A stretch of 64,000 bases of DNA from Hyphochytrium catenoides (taxonomy: Eukaryota; Protista; Hyphochytriomycota): NCBI GenBank assembly GCA_900088475.1, contig FLMG01000904.1, positions 62,001 to 126,000 on the forward strand. The letters are read 5' to 3'. Below the pieces are notes generated by a model. That model was not told the DNA's origin and made no database searches. It was given only the letters and a program-made list of their open reading frames with translations. This document shows, one piece after another, positions 8,380 through 13,196 of the stretch (positions are counted from its first letter, which is position 1; the number at the start of each line of letters is the position of its first letter). A program made the position numbers and the translations under genes.

Positions 8380-11300
8380 ATGGCGGGGGTAATAACTACA
8401 CTCATGACGGACTATGCGCTGCCTCTCGCGGCAGCCTCCCTTGCTGCAGCTGCAGCGGGCTATACCATGAGCGGAACACCGGGGGAAAAGGTGCACACTG
8501 GCAAGCGAGAGAGGGATGTGGCCACCGATGGCATCTCAAGTCGGCAGAAGTTGCTTAAGGTCGCGCGTGACCCCACCAACGTAGCTATTAAGAGAGCAAT
8601 CGTACAACCATTCGAAGTGGCGCTGCAGAAGTGCGTTGAGTCACTCCAGGAGACTGATGATAATGAAGCCACTGTGGCGCCAACTATGGTGGATCTGCTT
8701 CAGTACCGGGCGCTGACGCATCCCTCGGCCATTGTCTACACCTTTNNNNNNNNNNNNNNNNNNNNNNNNNNNNNNNNNCTCCTTACCCAGGGACCCTTAA
8801 CCGTGATTTGCCGAAGTTTAATAAGCTGGTCGAGGACTGTGGGGCTCGCGTTGTACTTACTGACAGAACATATCACATGGCAAGCCGCATGGGTAGTGTG
8901 AAGGTATGCAGGATAAATCTTGCTCCTTTATCTCTCAATTGATCTGAGTCACTGAACTCGTCCCTTGCAGGCTTACTTCGGAGGAGCGAGTTGGCCAAAG
9001 CAGCTCACCTGGTATACAACGGACAATCTCAACCTTGACATGGCAGAGGATTATCTTCCACTGAAGCTAAGGCCCAGTGACACTGCCTTCTTCCAATACT
9101 CGAGCGGGTCCACTTCGGACCCAAAAGCTGTTATTATAAGCCATCGCAATCTTCGGGCCCAGGTATGACTATGGTCTTTTCGCCTAAGCAATGGGTCTGA
9201 TTCTCAAAGCCGGGATATTGCTCTTTCGCCCTTCTCTCCTTCTTTGCTGTTGCGGATAGGTCCGAGTGTGGGAGAGTGTCAGACCAGAAGACGTCATGAT
9301 CTCATGGCTCCCTTCATATCATGATATGGGACTAGTTGGGTTCATCGTTGTACCGGCAGTCACTGGCTCGAAGTGTGTCTCTACTTCTCCGATCTCGTTT
9401 ATCAAGGACCCAGCAATATGGCTGAAGATGGTCACAAGATACCGTGGCACACATATCTGCGCTCCAAACTTTGGCTACGCTCTGGCTGCGAGGAAGGTTA
9501 GCTCCTTCCACAGACTCATTTGCTGTCTTTTGTTGCTCCACTGCTTCTATTAACCCCATTTTCCGGCTTGATGAAGATCTCAGCGGTGCAAGCTAAGAAC
9601 TTCAAGTTGGGATCCATCAAGCAAGCTATCTGCGCTGCGGAACCTATCCGAGCTGAGTCTCTGGCTGCATTCACAGAGCGCTTTGAGTCAGTAGGCTTCA
9701 AGGAAGACACTTACAACTGCGGCTATGGCTTGGCAGAATGCACTCTTGTTTGTTCAGGACAAGATCCGCTAAAGAGAACCCCGCCGAAAGTGTTAGTCCT
9801 AAACAAGAAGAAGTTAGAGAACGAGCAGGTAGTAGAAGAGATAAAGGCTTCGCGCTCCAAGAAGAAGGGGCCCGTTACGGAGTCAGCAACTTTCGTCGGA
9901 TGCGGCCAGGCCATGCCTGGGTTCGAGGTGGTCATTGTCGACACCAAAAGCAGGCGCGGGATGGCTGAGGTAGGTGTTTGATATTAGTGGTGAGTGTGAT
10001 GTCGTTATGCTGATGGTGACAATGGGGCATTGCTGGCTCCTCTGTAGAATCAAGTAGGCGAGATTTGGGTAGGAGGCGACTCTGTGGCAGAGGGATATTA
10101 TAATCGTTGGAAGCAGACCCAAGAGACTTTCGAGTGCACCATACAAGGGAGACCGAGCGAGAAGTTTATGCGGACAGGGGACCTCGGTTTCATTCGGAAG
10201 GGCGAGCTTTTCGTCACTGGACGGGCCAAGGACCTCATTATTATCAGAGGTCGGAATGTCGCCCCACAGGATGTAGAACTCAGTGTAGAACAGGTACGTG
10301 GGCATAATGTAAGGTCGTATGCTTCTGCTGTAGACAGCTTATTGACACCGTGACGTGGCCAATAACTCACAGGCTCATTCTACCATTCGTCCGGGCTGTG
10401 TGGCAGCCTTCAGCATCGAGGTGGACGAGGAGGAACGCCTTGTAGTTATAGCGGAGCTTCGTTCGGCCGAAAAAGAGCGGAATACTCTACAAGACATCTC
10501 CTCCAGCGTTTCGAGGAACATTATGAAAGATCACCAGCTGCCCTGCTTTGGCATCCTTTTAATTGCGCCGAGGACGATTCCAAAAACAACCAGTGGGAAG
10601 ATTCAACGTCACGGTGCTAAGAAGTTCTACCTGTACGAATGTTGTTCTTTGTTGCTTAATGAGGCAATGTTGCTCACCTTTCCGCCACCTCATGCTTTAA
10701 CTGGCTATCAACTTCATCACTTCTCAGGTCACAGACTTCTAAGTGCGTCCTGCACCGCTTTCAGCTTGATCACCTGGCGGGAAAGAGTTCTAGTTCTGGG
10801 CTGGAGGGTGCATTGAAGGGTAATCTGAAGGGGAAGCCATCAAAAGCCAAGAGCGTCCGTCAGTCTGCTAGAAGGTCTACAGTTCCGGCTCCTTCAGAGA
10901 AGGAACAATCAGCAAATCCTGGCATTTGCCAGGAGAATGGCGGTAATAAATCAATAGAGCATGGTGCTATGCGACGAGTAAAAGAAGAGGATATTGAGGC
11001 CTGGCTCACGACACGCCTAAAAGAGCTCACTTCCGATGAAACGATCGACAGCAAGGCGAGTTGGGCTTCCTCAGGATTGGATTCAGTGACTGTCGTTAAC
11101 CTTAGCGCCGAATTGGGCAACTGGTTAGGGTGTGTGGTCCCACCAGCGGCTTTCTTTCAGTATGACTCGCCATTTGCTCTGGCCCATGCACCGGGAATAC
11201 TTGAGGGGAACATCGCGCTCTCACAAGGCGAATCTGAAGGTGTGACGGTAAGACCTACCTGCGCAGCAGTCACCTACCGCAATCAAGTATCTCGCTTGCT

Positions 11301-13196
11301 TGGGATGTCTTATGGTTTGCTGACAGCTTCTCTTATATTCAATTATCTTATCACCTGCACCTCCTTAGCACTACTGGTGTCCTAGTCGAGTGCATGCAAT
11401 GGGCTTAAGGACCAATCTTAATCCGCTTTCTACTACTTTCGTTAACAGGGGCCAGCTTCAGCTGACTTATCCTCAATCATCGTGGATACTGATGGCGCCC
11501 ACAACGTCCCTTCCTCATTTTATGACATCGCGGAGTTTCCAGAGTACGTGAACATCTCGAACACCATCAAGGAGTTCAGACAGGCGGGGCTGCAGGTCCC
11601 TTATCTTCAGGAGATCGACCGAAGCAGGCCCATCCTTAACTACAACACATACAACTACCTCGGCATAGCAGGACACGCGACGTTAAAGGAAGCAAGCAAG
11701 AAAGCGATTGACGAATGGGGTACGACAATGTCATCGTCTCCTATCGTGGGCCAAAACAGCATCAATCTGGCACTTGAAGCTGAGATAAGGGACTTCTTGG
11801 GAACAGAAGGAGCTGTTTGCTTTATTGGGGGTTGGCAGGCGAATGTCTCAACCATCTCAACGCTGGTGGGACGGCAAGACCTGATCTTGGCTGACGCACT
11901 AAATCATGACTGCTGTGTGGCTGGAGGAAAGCTTAGTGGGGCTACAGTTATGCCCTTCCCGCATAATGATTGGAAGCAGGTAAGGACCATAGGAGCCGAA
12001 CGTGATGAGAGTTTAAGACATGTGACCATCATCTGTTATGGTTTGTTGCTTGTTACCATGTATTTGAAGCTCATGCTCCGTTACTTCTTGGTGCTCACTG
12101 TAGTTGCCTCAGTTACCCTCTTCTCTCCAGATACCAACGTCCTCTATAAACTAGATTCAACTTACTGATCTACCTCCTCCCGTTAGTGTGAGAAGATACT
12201 AGCCGCCATGAGGAACCGCTATCGACGAGTCCTAATCGTGATTGAGGGCGTGTACAGCATGGACGGAGACATCCCAGACCTATCGAAGTTTATTGACCTA
12301 AAGAAGAAGTATAAGACAATGCTCTTCCTGGACGAGGCGCATAGCATTGGGACTCTAGGGAAAACTGGTCGGGGCTTAACGGAGCATTGTGGGGTTCCAG
12401 TGGAGGCGGTGGATATAATAATGGGGACGATGAGCAAGGCGATTGGGTCCCAGGTGAGCGCATGATCAAACGAACGTAGTCCTTCTCCACTTCCACCGCT
12501 CTTCTTATGTGTTTGGAAAACACCTTAACGCGTCTGCGGAGCAAGTCATGAAGGCTCAGTTCTGTTGCATTGCCAATGGTCATATTCTAAGAGGCTGAGC
12601 TCCAAAGCGTCACTTTTGAGTTGTAGCACCTGATGCTAGGAGACTTCGTTCTGAACCTATACTTTGGCAGGGTGGCTTCATTTGCGGACGTAAAGAGTTG
12701 ATTGACTTGATCAAATACTCAGCTGGTGGGTTTGTCTTTTCCGTGGGGAGCTCCCCTGCCAATGCTTCCAGCGCTCTCGCGGGGCTCAAGCTTTTGAGAA
12801 AGGAGCCATCGAGGATTGAGAGACTGAGGTTAGGACAATCGACTTAAAAGTGGCTGCTTTTGCTCCAATGAGAACCAAACTCTAATCGTCTTTCGGCGTT
12901 ACAGGGCACGCGCCTGCCTCTTCTACGATTTGGCCAAAGAGGCTGGCCTGAATGTGGGGCGAGCTGTTAGAGGAGCGGCTGTCATCCCTGTTATAGTTGG
13001 TTCTTCGGTGGCATGCGTGGGGGTATCAGCAGCACTGAGTGCACATGACATCAATGTCAAGCCCATCATATATCCAGCAGTGGAGGAGGGACAGGCAAGA
13101 CTGCGGTTCTTCATTTCGGCAGTAAGGACCGAGGATGAAGTTAAAAGAACCATAGCCGCGTTAAAAAAAGAGATCCTCAGCGCCACAGCTTCATAG
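8380..13196 (+). CDS. Fatty acyl-AMP ligase - acyl carrier protein - PLP-dependent alpha-oxoamine synthase (BioF/SPT family) tridomain fusion, multi-exon
   Basis: FAAL motifs [87 protein letters not shown]; ACP GLDSV (11074-11088); [52 protein letters not shown]. Predicted GT-AG splices at about 10633-10727 and 11248-11448 join the three domains in frame. N gap 8746-8778 hides part of the FAAL N-terminal region. Confidence 0.88.

What the first reader, a model, noticed from the sequence alone, without database searches (positions are those of the whole stretch)
8380..13196. Intron-containing eukaryotic FAAL-ACP-alpha-oxoamine synthase: a one-protein aminolipid assembly line
Seen: a FAAL (WLPxYHDMGL signature plus the FAAL-type insertion after YGLAECTL), an ACP with GLDS and a complete BioF/SPT-family PLP domain ([19 protein letters not shown]) join in frame across about 10 spliceosomal introns. 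Established: FAALs load fatty acids onto ACP without CoA; AOS enzymes perform decarboxylative condensation of an amino acid with an acyl thioester. Canonical eukaryotic SPT is an acyl-CoA-using LCB1/LCB2 heteromer, whereas ACP-tethered AOS modules are known from bacterial systems (RedL/RedN, PigH, SxtA; stand-alone RkpG/WcbT). The linker [11 protein letters not shown]...GLQVPY resembles, from memory, the region preceding the AOS domain in such bacterial proteins. Inference: a bacterially derived, now intron-domesticated, CoA-independent route to 3-ketosphingoid-like or other alpha-aminoketone lipids in a protist, which I do not recognise as described.
Basis: partly seen in the sequence, partly recalled or inferred. 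Interest (0 to 1): 0.88.

Follow-up and report, generated by a model that had tools for sequence, protein, structure and literature searches.

The report
Fused fatty-acid-loading aminoketone lipid synthase
This protist gene is real and makes one protein that should activate a fatty acid, hold it on its own carrier arm and join it to an amino acid; water moulds and many bacteria carry the same untested fusion, so it is another member of that family and not a one-off.

Summary
Window 8380-13196 (+) is one intact gene of 11 exons and 10 GT-AG introns. [quoted passage not shown]

The 33-N gap is really 208 bases in two DNA runs of the same organism, and it keeps the frame.

Support for the splicing model:
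- Exon junctions in the FAAL and AOS domains align without gaps to intronless orthologues.
- All seven indels seen in other contigs lie in introns or UTRs.
- All 13 substitutions listed inside the FAAL and AOS domains are silent.

No RNA run holds the gene.

The same three-domain protein exists in every oomycete order, about 50% identical and mislabelled "fatty-acid-CoA ligase" or "polyketide synthase". It also occurs widely in bacteria such as Planctomycetota and Acidobacteriota. A 2013 survey listed the bacterial layout with product unknown.

All eukaryotic copies form one clade, which fits a single bacterial acquisition. They also gained an N-terminal hydrophobic anchor.

The AOS domain fails every curated cut-off (BioF, KBL, SPT, ALAS). 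It sits among carrier-linked assembly-line AOS domains, and its PLP core is most like LCB2.

I found no paper that characterises the fusion; the product is unknown.

The parts
8380..8903 (+). Exon 1: start codon, N-terminal extension and start of the FAAL domain. It contains the assembly gap 8746-8778, whose true length is 208 nt and which is in frame.
   Evidence: The [20 protein letters not shown] / [13 protein letters not shown] flanks align to orthologues, which have a stretch of matching length between them.
8413..8463 (+). N-terminal Ala-rich hydrophobic segment [17 protein letters not shown], a probable membrane anchor. It is weaker here than in orthologues.
   Evidence: All full-length eukaryotic orthologues have a hydrophobic 'AAASLAA'-type segment at residues 5-60 (19-residue Kyte-Doolittle maximum 1.7-2.3 in 12 of the 15 orthologues scanned), followed by a basic cluster. 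The four bacterial homologues have no such N-terminal segment. The window scores 1.34.
8971..9162 (+). Exon 2: FAAL core with the SSGSTSDPK adenylation motif (9100-9126).
9260..9496 (+). Exon 3: [14 protein letters not shown] (9305-9334).
   Evidence: the top NCBIfam hits are FAAL subfamilies (PRK05850, FadD28, FadD21, FadD32).
9577..9969 (+). Exon 4: FAAL with GYGLAECT (9721-9744) and the FAAL-type insertion region (9754-9906).
   Evidence: this exon matches only FAAL structures in the PDB (7r7e, 3kxw, FadD32, FadD23, 3pbk), and the insertion aligns; 115 residues span 75 Pfam profile positions.
10048..10293 (+). Exon 5: FAAL hinge, TGDLGF and [13 protein letters not shown] motifs.
10373..10632 (+). 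Exon 6: FAAL C-terminal subdomain, [10 protein letters not shown] (10580-10609).
10728..11247 (+). Exon 7: linker plus acyl carrier protein domain. The phosphopantetheine-attachment serine is in GLDS (11074-11085).
   Evidence: PF00550, 31.7 bits against a cut-off of 20.8. The D-S pair is invariant in alignment A1.
11449..11979 (+). Exon 8: ACP-AOS linker (FPEY, GLQVPY) and AOS N-terminal part with the PLP-stacking His in LNHDC (11899-11913).
12187..12453 (+). Exon 9: AOS PLP core, with [14 protein letters not shown] and the Schiff-base Lys in GTMSK (12424-12438).
   Evidence: The best solved relative is human SPTLC2 at 86 bits.
12671..12828 (+). Exon 10: AOS.
12905..13196 (+). Exon 11: AOS C-terminal domain with the conserved ARLRF arginines (13095-13109) and stop TAG.

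Best explanation
This is an intact nuclear gene for a self-contained, three-step enzyme of about 1,264 residues. It belongs to a family shared with oomycetes and many bacteria.

Inferred mechanism:
1. The FAAL domain adenylates a free, probably long-chain, fatty acid. Like other FAALs, it passes the acyl group to the phosphopantetheine arm of its own ACP, not to CoA.
2. The C-terminal PLP-dependent AOS domain, acting as a homodimer, condenses the ACP-bound acyl thioester with an amino acid in a decarboxylative Claisen reaction.
3. This releases a long-chain alpha-aminoketone, that is, a 3-keto-sphingoid-type base or a close analogue.

In eukaryotes an added N-terminal hydrophobic segment probably anchors the enzyme to a membrane with the catalytic domains in the cytosol.

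Shown here: the gene structure, domain identities, catalytic motifs, family membership and the single eukaryotic clade.

Inferred only: every chemical step, the substrates and the localisation.
For: Gene model:
- One open frame across 10 GT-AG introns.
- The gap is 208 nt and in frame.
- The spliced protein aligns at residues 1-1064 in a single HSP, about 50% identical, to oomycete proteins.
- The seven junctions that fall inside the FAAL and AOS domains are gap-free against intronless orthologues.
- All 7 indels lie in introns or UTRs. All 13 listed substitutions inside the FAAL and AOS domains are synonymous. All 8 non-synonymous changes lie in the N-terminal extension, the linker exon or the ACP domain.

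FAAL:
- NCBIfam FAAL subfamilies top every exon.
- An orthologue scores 331 bits to the olefin-synthase FAAL and 320 bits to the Legionella FAAL, against 73 bits or less to CoA ligases.
- The insertion exon hits only FAALs.

ACP: PF00550 with the GLDS serine.

AOS:
- Lys, His, Asp-x-x-His and Arg motifs are all present.
- The nearest relatives among 1.84 billion proteins are almost all carrier-linked AOS domains of FAAL or PKS assembly lines. This argues for an acyl-S-ACP substrate.
- The PLP core ranks LCB2/SPTLC2 first among solved structures.

Precedent: an unfused AasR-AcpR-SPT system makes 3-oxo-sphinganine in Rhodobacteria, and its synthetase cannot acylate CoA (PMC9386255).

Eukaryote-only N-terminal hydrophobic segment.
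Against: - There is no transcript evidence for this organism.
- I found no member of the fusion family with a known product (10 literature searches, for example).
- The AOS domain is below the curated cut-offs for SPT, BioF, KBL, ALAS and CqsA, so the amino-acid substrate is open.
- NCBIfam's bioF model scores higher than the SPT models.
- Neither the window nor the planctomycete loci have neighbouring lipid-pathway genes that would name the product.
- The hydrophobic segment in this organism is weak (Kyte-Doolittle 1.34).
- A Phytophthora species already has a conventional LCB2 (PMC5519370), so a second long-chain-base route is not needed a priori.
Confidence: 0.7

Rival explanations
1. The enzyme is a self-loading KAPA synthase for biotin. 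The ligase would load pimelate, or a precursor diacid, onto the ACP. The AOS domain would act as BioF with L-alanine.
For: - TIGR00858 (bioF) is the top NCBIfam model for the AOS exons and for orthologue domains, at 307-348 bits.
- E. coli BioF uses pimeloyl-ACP, and a natural BioW-BioF fusion exists (PMC9544090).
- Public sources auto-name the bacterial homologues '8-amino-7-oxononanoate synthase'.
Against: - The scores are below the bioF cut-off of 426.
- Among solved structures BioF ranks far below LCB2, KBL and SPT: 121 against 216 bits for the orthologue, and 45 or less against 86 bits for the window's PLP-core exon.
- The ligase resembles long-chain FAALs.
- The eukaryotic copies carry a hydrophobic N-terminal segment.
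- The nearest AOS relatives are PKS-terminal domains.
Confidence: 0.08
2. The chemistry is the same, but the product is a diffusible signal or a secondary-metabolite precursor and not a membrane sphingoid lipid. Examples would be an alpha-aminoketone or hydroxyketone of the CAI-1/LAI-1 type, or a pyrrole or pyrazine precursor.
For: - The AOS domain clusters with assembly-line AOS domains of natural-product type.
- By established knowledge, RedL, PigH and SxtA use embedded AOS domains for secondary metabolites.
- A Phytophthora species already has a conventional LCB2.
Against: - In planctomycetes the gene sits alone among housekeeping genes (KsgA, enolase, RF-1), not in a biosynthetic cluster.
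- It is kept in obligate biotrophs such as Peronospora, Hyaloperonospora and Bremia.
- The CqsA model scores lowest of the named AOS equivalog families apart from the second bioF model PRK05937, at 139-164 bits against a cut-off of 428.
Confidence: 0.17
3. The fusion is an artefact of gene modelling or assembly, or the locus is an unexpressed relic. FAAL-ACP and AOS would then be separate products, or none would be made.
For: No RNA run holds the locus. Retention of intron 10633-10727 would stop translation at 10816. The locus contains an assembly gap.
Against: - Relatives encode the same three domains in single uninterrupted ORFs of 3.5-3.9 kb.
- The gap is bridged in frame by independent contigs.
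- The junctions are gap-free against orthologues.
- Indels occur only in introns and UTRs, and FAAL and AOS substitutions are all silent.
- All catalytic motifs are intact.
Confidence: 0.04

Closest known systems
Oomycete orthologues, for example Pythium oligandrum Poli38472_012517, Saprolegnia parasitica SPRG_08712 and Phytophthora 'fatty-acid-CoA ligase' entries
   Same: The FAAL-ACP-AOS order is the same, with an N-terminal hydrophobic segment. They are about 50% identical over 1,060 residues and fall in one clade with the window (SH-aLRT 100).
   Different: The relatives whose DNA I read (metagenome contigs P0001, P0188, P0190, P0191) are single ORFs, whereas this gene has 10 introns and branches outside the oomycetes. 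None has been characterised, and their database names are misleading.
Bacterial A-CP-AOS tri-domain proteins, for example Blastopirellula marina A3ZWL3 and Microscilla marina A1ZVW4 in Milano et al. 2013 (PMC3870968), and many Planctomycetota and Acidobacteriota
   Same: The three domains come in the same order. Identity is 35-38% to the eukaryotic orthologue P0001, and the FPEY...GLxNPYF linker is conserved.
   Different: They have no N-terminal anchor and no introns. The product is listed as '?'. The genes stand alone among housekeeping genes.
AasR-AcpR-SPT system of Rhodobacteria (Caulobacter CC_1165, CC_1163, CC_1162; PMC9386255)
   Same: The logic is the same. An AMP-forming synthetase that cannot acylate CoA loads a dedicated ACP, and an AOS enzyme condenses acyl-ACP with an amino acid.
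   Different: It consists of three separate proteins. Its AOS is a true SPT equivalog, whereas this one fails those cut-offs. I did not test whether AasR is FAAL-type.
Assembly-line AOS domains: RedL, RedN, PigH and SxtA (from established knowledge); KS-AT-DH-ER-KR-ACP-AOS proteins; PfSgaA PKS plus SgaB AOS sphingolipid route (PMC12134224)
   Same: The AOS off-loads a carrier-bound acyl chain. These are the nearest AOS relatives in the tree.
   Different: Those systems build or extend the chain with PKS domains. Here a ready-made fatty acid is loaded and there are no KS or AT domains.
Canonical eukaryotic SPT (LCB1/LCB2 heteromer)
   Same: The PLP fold and catalytic residues match. LCB2/SPTLC2 is the best solved match to the PLP core.
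   Different: SPT uses acyl-CoA, is a heteromer with small subunits, and has no ligase or ACP. A Phytophthora species has a conventional LCB2 in addition.
BioW-BioF fusion of Corynebacterium amycolatum (PMC9544090)
   Same: An acid-activating domain is fused to an AOS domain and yields aminoketones from fatty acids and amino acids.
   Different: It works through acyl-CoA, has no ACP, has a BioW-type rather than FAAL-type ligase, and serves biotin synthesis.

Membership tests
Fatty acyl-AMP ligase (FAAL) | Adenylate-forming core motifs (SSGSTxxPK, YGxAE, TGDxG, GRxKD, PKTxSGKIxR) | tested here: met
   all motifs are present, and the exons run in order along PF00501.
Fatty acyl-AMP ligase (FAAL) | FAAL-specific insertion in the N-terminal domain, and closer kinship to FAALs than to acyl-CoA ligases | tested here: met
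   the insertion exon matches only FAAL structures; 331 and 320 bits to FAALs against 73 or less to CoA ligases. FAAL subfamilies rank at or near the top for every FAAL exon.
Fatty acyl-AMP ligase (FAAL) | Rejects CoA and transfers the acyl group to holo-ACP | not testable with these tools
   Needs an enzyme assay.
Acyl carrier protein (PP-binding) | PF00550 fold with the conserved (G/L)xDS serine | tested here: met
   31.7 bits against a cut-off of 20.8. GLDS lies at 11074-11085, and the D-S pair is invariant in A1. Phosphopantetheinylation was not tested.
Alpha-oxoamine synthase family (PLP fold type I) | Schiff-base Lys, PLP-stacking His, D-x-x-H and C-terminal Arg motifs | tested here: met
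   GTMSK, LNHDC, DEAHS and ARLRF are present. The match to PF00155 is collinear.
Serine palmitoyltransferase (equivalog) | Score above the curated NCBIfam SPT cut-offs | tested here: not met
   four family members score 182-299 bits against cut-offs of 500-670. The window's four AOS exons sum to about 190-226 bits per model. LCB2 is the best PDB match, but this is a resemblance only. Use of L-serine was not tested.
8-amino-7-oxononanoate synthase BioF (equivalog) | Score above the TIGR00858 cut-off (426.45) | tested here: not met
   307-348 bits. The window's exons sum to about 275 bits.
FAAL-ACP-AOS tri-domain family (oomycete and bacterial) | Full-length collinear homology across all three domains and placement inside the family tree | tested here: met
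   a single HSP over residues 1-1064; inside the eukaryotic clade, SH-aLRT 100; the conserved-domain junctions are gap-free.

The most novel reading that the evidence does not exclude
Oomycetes and their sister protists run a second route to long-chain bases or 1-deoxy-type aminolipids. The route is bacterially derived, membrane-anchored and CoA-independent. It channels free fatty acids through an in-cis ACP, in parallel with the canonical LCB1/LCB2 enzyme. Because plants and animals lack it, it would be a lineage-specific lipid pathway.
Probability: 0.3. Interest if true: 0.8.

Novelty: new member of a known kind. Interest (0 to 1): 0.5.

Why it matters
If the inferred chemistry holds, a whole eukaryotic lineage that includes major crop and fish pathogens has a one-protein way to turn free fatty acids into amino-ketone lipids without CoA. 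This would be the fused counterpart of the three-protein bacterial AasR-AcpR-SPT system. It also looks like a clear case of a bacterial assembly-line enzyme being domesticated, with introns and a membrane anchor added.

The family is large, conserved and mislabelled in databases, and as far as I could find it is biochemically untouched. A single expression experiment would therefore annotate thousands of genes.

For this particular window the gain is modest. It adds an early-branching, intron-rich member and a corrected gene model across an assembly gap.

Tried and rejected
- RNA evidence: two run searches and one read-laying found no RNA run that holds the locus.
- Literature: ten full-text searches used combinations of FAAL, oxoamine synthase, ACP, oomycete, planctomycete, biotin and Pfam names. 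They found only the 2013 domain survey and analogous unfused or PKS systems. One search was swamped by the word 'tridomain'. Subscription journals are not covered.
- Bacterial gene neighbourhood: 27 loci were clustered. The recurring neighbours are BBP7, KsgA, enolase, a TIM-barrel protein and a PQQ-propeller protein. This is shared Pirellulales synteny, not a pathway.
- Synteny with eukaryotic metagenome contigs (calpain, ODAD1): none in the window.
- Window neighbours: the AROM gene lies upstream and a kinase downstream, with no lipid genes.
- Substrate assignment by equivalog models: the domain is below every cut-off.
- Rooting and donor: the bacterial sister of the eukaryotic clade is unresolved (support 57), so I name no donor phylum.
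- Organism identity: not established. I rely on the tree and on earlier unchecked notes that it is an oomycete-like stramenopile.
- Not done: structure prediction (judged unlikely to add to the sequence evidence), and a reference tree with named BioF, KBL, SPT and ALAS sequences (none were available as session sequences).
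Full report
**Observation**

The stretch 8380-13196 on the + strand holds one coherent gene. I joined the open segments at GT..AG boundaries. 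This gives exon 1 at 8380-8903, interrupted by the N run, followed by ten more exons: 8971-9162, 9260-9496, 9577-9969, 10048-10293, 10373-10632, 10728-11247, 11449-11979, 12187-12453, 12671-12828 and 12905-13196.

The ten introns are 67-217 nt long. Downstream of the gap exactly one frame is open, giving 1,072 residues ending at TAG. The other two frames have 53 and 57 stops.

Pfam and NCBIfam scans of the single exons place them in order along three profiles:
- AMP-binding, with FAAL subfamilies at or near the top.
- PP-binding, at 31.7 bits against a cut-off of 20.8.
- Aminotran_1_2, with the BioF, KBL and SPT models.

**The assembly gap**

The scan's program asked for this to be tested first. 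Contigs of two DNA runs labelled as the same organism bridge position 8745 to 8779 with 208 letters where the window has 33 N.

The arithmetic is 366 + 208 + 2 = 576 nt, or 192 codons. The upstream ATG frame and the downstream frame, which starts at 8781, are therefore the same frame. The hidden stretch is 70 codons.

Intronless orthologues have a stretch of matching length between the flanking VYTF and PYPG. A loose end from a soil-metagenome contig reads LDEECREVST directly after position 8745. That fits the family consensus FLxDGExExV. The gap hides an ordinary part of the FAAL N-terminal domain. The full protein is about 1,264 residues.

**Support for the splicing model without RNA**

No RNA run was listed as holding the locus, and the one metatranscriptome I laid gave nothing. 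Three indirect lines support the model.

1. The spliced protein aligns at residues 1-1064 in a single BLASTP segment, about 50% identical, to oomycete proteins. At the seven junctions that fall inside the FAAL and AOS domains, the alignment to intronless relatives has no gap.
2. Relatives encode all three domains in one uninterrupted ORF of 3.5-3.9 kb on metagenome contigs. Two of these contigs carry eukaryotic neighbours: calpain, ODAD1 and, on one of them, topoisomerase I.
3. Differences between the window and other contigs of the organism or a soil strain follow the model.
   - All seven indels lie in predicted introns or UTRs.
   - Of the 40 best-supported substitutions, 21 are coding: 13 synonymous and 8 non-synonymous.
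   - All eight non-synonymous changes fall in the N-terminal extension, the FAAL-ACP linker exon or the ACP domain.
   - Every listed substitution inside the FAAL and AOS domains is synonymous.
   This pattern indicates a gene under purifying selection.

**Domain identities**

*Ligase.* The ligase is FAAL-type. FAAL subfamilies rank at or near the top of the NCBIfam hits on each FAAL exon. The FAAL part of the orthologue P0001 scores as follows against solved structures:

| Solved structure | Bits |
|---|---|
| Olefin-synthase FAAL (7r7e) | 331 |
| Legionella FAAL (3kxw) | 320 |
| FadD32 and FadD23 | 207-223 |
| Acyl-CoA ligases | 73 or less |

The exon carrying the insertion after GYGLAECT matches only FAAL structures, and the insertion aligns.

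*Carrier domain.* The ACP has the GLDS serine.

*AOS domain.* It has the Schiff-base lysine (GTMSK), the PLP-stacking histidine, DEAHS and the C-terminal ARLRF arginines.

It is conserved in bacterial fusions as FPEY...GLxNPYF.

**Distribution**

I searched 1.84 billion representative proteins with the first AOS exon. The best hit was a 1,297-residue FAAL-ACP-AOS protein. Nearly all of the top 150 hits were AOS domains attached to carrier domains in FAAL or type I PKS proteins.

Using that best hit as a query returned two groups:
- The same three-domain protein in Phytophthora, Nothophytophthora, Pythium, Globisporangium, Peronospora, Hyaloperonospora, Aphanomyces, Achlya, Saprolegnia and Thraustotheca. 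These are 1,200-1,365 residues long and named 'fatty-acid-CoA ligase', 'polyketide synthase' or 'carrier domain-containing protein'.
- More than 70 clusters of 1,070-1,260 residues, probably bacterial, about 36% identical, auto-named '8-amino-7-oxononanoate synthase'.

A scan of one genome per prokaryotic species found full-length fusions in many Planctomycetota. These include Rhodopirellula, Blastopirellula, Bythopirellula, Pirellula staleyi, Thermoguttaceae, Phycisphaerales and a Kuenenia bin. It also found them in Acidobacteriota (Pyrinomonadaceae) and in a Rokubacteria bin. The ESM Atlas adds clusters from Pseudomonadota and Bacillota.

Milano et al. 2013 (PMC3870968) tabulated 'A-CP-PLP2' proteins in Blastopirellula marina and Microscilla marina with the product marked '?'. 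They stated that such assemblies were found only in bacterial phyla. A 2026 FAAL census labels the oomycete multidomain FAALs 'FAAL-NRPS' (PMC12820801).

**Phylogeny**

A maximum-likelihood tree of 55 full-length fusions puts all 17 eukaryotic rows, including the window, on one side of a long, fully supported branch (SH-aLRT 100, length 1.19). The branching order inside that clade is:
1. The window and one metagenome sequence, at the base.
2. A group of three uncultured sequences; I read the DNA of all three and each is a single uninterrupted ORF.
3. The Saprolegniales and the Peronosporales/Pythiales.

An AOS-only tree of 119 rows gives the same eukaryotic clade (support 95).

The bacterial sister is unresolved (support 57), so I name no donor. 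Presence across many bacterial phyla, against one narrow eukaryotic clade, makes a single bacterium-to-eukaryote transfer the simplest reading. That transfer would be followed by vertical descent, and in this lineage by intron gain. Earlier unchecked notes of this scan describe the genome as an oomycete-like stramenopile, which fits the tree.

**What the AOS domain is and is not**

Four family members score below every curated NCBIfam cut-off:

| Model | Score (bits) | Cut-off (bits) |
|---|---|---|
| bioF (TIGR00858) | 307-348 | 426 |
| KBL (PRK06939) | 252-296 | 460 |
| SPT models | 182-299 | 500-670 |
| ALAS | 206-246 | 339 |
| CqsA | 139-164 | 428 |

Among solved structures the ranking is different. 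For the orthologue the order is human SPTLC2 216 bits, Arabidopsis LCB2a 198, ThAOS 193, bacterial SPT 179, KBL 176 and E. coli BioF 121. For the window's own PLP-core exon it is SPTLC2 86, KBL 67, bacterial SPT 61 and BioF 45 or less.

The domain is therefore a separate, carrier-linked AOS clade that looks more like LCB2 than like BioF. Its amino-acid substrate cannot be read from sequence.

**Context**

In the window the upstream neighbour is the multifunctional AROM gene. An EPSP-synthase exon lies at 3261-3836 and a shikimate-dehydrogenase exon at 5975-6316. The downstream genes are unrelated.

In planctomycetes the gene stands alone among housekeeping genes: KsgA, enolase, RF-1 and a BBP7-family protein. 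That looks more like core metabolism than a secondary-metabolite cluster, but it does not name a product.

**A eukaryote-specific addition**

Every full-length eukaryotic orthologue starts with an Ala/Val-rich hydrophobic segment of about 20 residues (AAASLAA-type). In 12 of the 15 orthologues scanned this segment gives a 19-residue Kyte-Doolittle maximum of 1.7-2.3 within residues 5-60. It is followed by a basic cluster. The four bacterial proteins examined have no such N-terminal segment.

The window has the motif ([17 protein letters not shown], 8413-8463) at a lower hydrophobicity of 1.34. I read it as a signal-anchor that places the catalytic domains on the cytosolic face of a membrane. 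This is inference only.

**Mechanism and rivals**

The best-supported reading is a minimal load-and-release assembly line:
1. The FAAL adenylates a free fatty acid.
2. The acyl group moves to the in-cis holo-ACP.
3. The dimeric AOS domain condenses acyl-S-ACP with an amino acid, losing CO2, and releases an alpha-aminoketone.

The closest characterised logic is the three-protein AasR-AcpR-SPT system of Rhodobacteria. There the synthetase cannot acylate CoA and the SPT prefers acyl-AcpR (PMC9386255). Phytophthora ramorum has a conventional LCB2 as well (PMC5519370), so in oomycetes this enzyme would work in parallel, not as a replacement.

The rivals are:
- A self-loading KAPA synthase for biotin. 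This is disfavoured by the PDB ranking, the long-chain FAAL kinship and the anchor.
- A signal or secondary-metabolite precursor with the same chemistry.
- A modelling artefact or relic. This is disfavoured by uninterrupted orthologous ORFs and the variant pattern.

**Verdict**

The gene and its architecture are real and well supported. The claim of a bacterially derived, intron-bearing FAAL-ACP-AOS is sound. The claim that it is unrecognised holds only for function.

The architecture is catalogued in bacteria and is present, mislabelled, in all oomycete orders. This window adds an early-branching, intron-rich member and a repaired gene model. The family as a whole remains an attractive, easily testable target, and the product is unknown.

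Noticed in passing
window 8746-8778: The assembly gap is written as 33 N. Two DNA runs of the same organism bridge it with 208 letters, so gap lengths in this assembly can be underestimated about six-fold and may hide coding sequence.
   Followed up: yes
window 10677-10980: Two contig versions of equal length cover 10677-10793 and 10870-10980 in both DNA runs of the organism. They differ at 4-5 positions. This looks like two alleles (heterozygosity) in the variable FAAL-ACP linker.
   Followed up: partly
window 3261-6316 (+): The upstream neighbour appears to be a multi-exon AROM-type shikimate-pathway gene. An EPSP-synthase exon lies at 3261-3836 and a shikimate-dehydrogenase exon at 5975-6316.
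   Followed up: partly
window 8302-12374, run X6: A 2024 soil metagenome holds contigs mostly 95-99% identical to this locus, so a close strain of the organism lives in soil. One further contig of that run matches only 12238-12269, the conserved GVYSMDGD core, and belongs to another organism.
   Followed up: partly
P0038, P0004, P0029 (representative-library hits): Some relatives have odd layouts. One 2,624-residue protein reads FAAL-AOS-FAAL. Two proteins carry two AOS domains in tandem.
   Followed up: no
P0189/P0192 and P0184/P0193: Saprolegnia parasitica and Aphanomyces stellatus each have two paralogues of the fusion. One Aphanomyces copy sits on a long branch (0.93).
   Followed up: no
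L085 and L087: Two uncultured eukaryotic contigs carry intronless copies of the fusion with the same neighbours: a calpain-type peptidase upstream and ODAD1 downstream. This synteny is absent from the window.
   Followed up: yes
window 37055-38404 (-), 48591-49370 (-): The window contains a long single-exon Myb DNA-binding protein and an ankyrin-repeat ORF. Both are unrelated to the finding.
   Followed up: no
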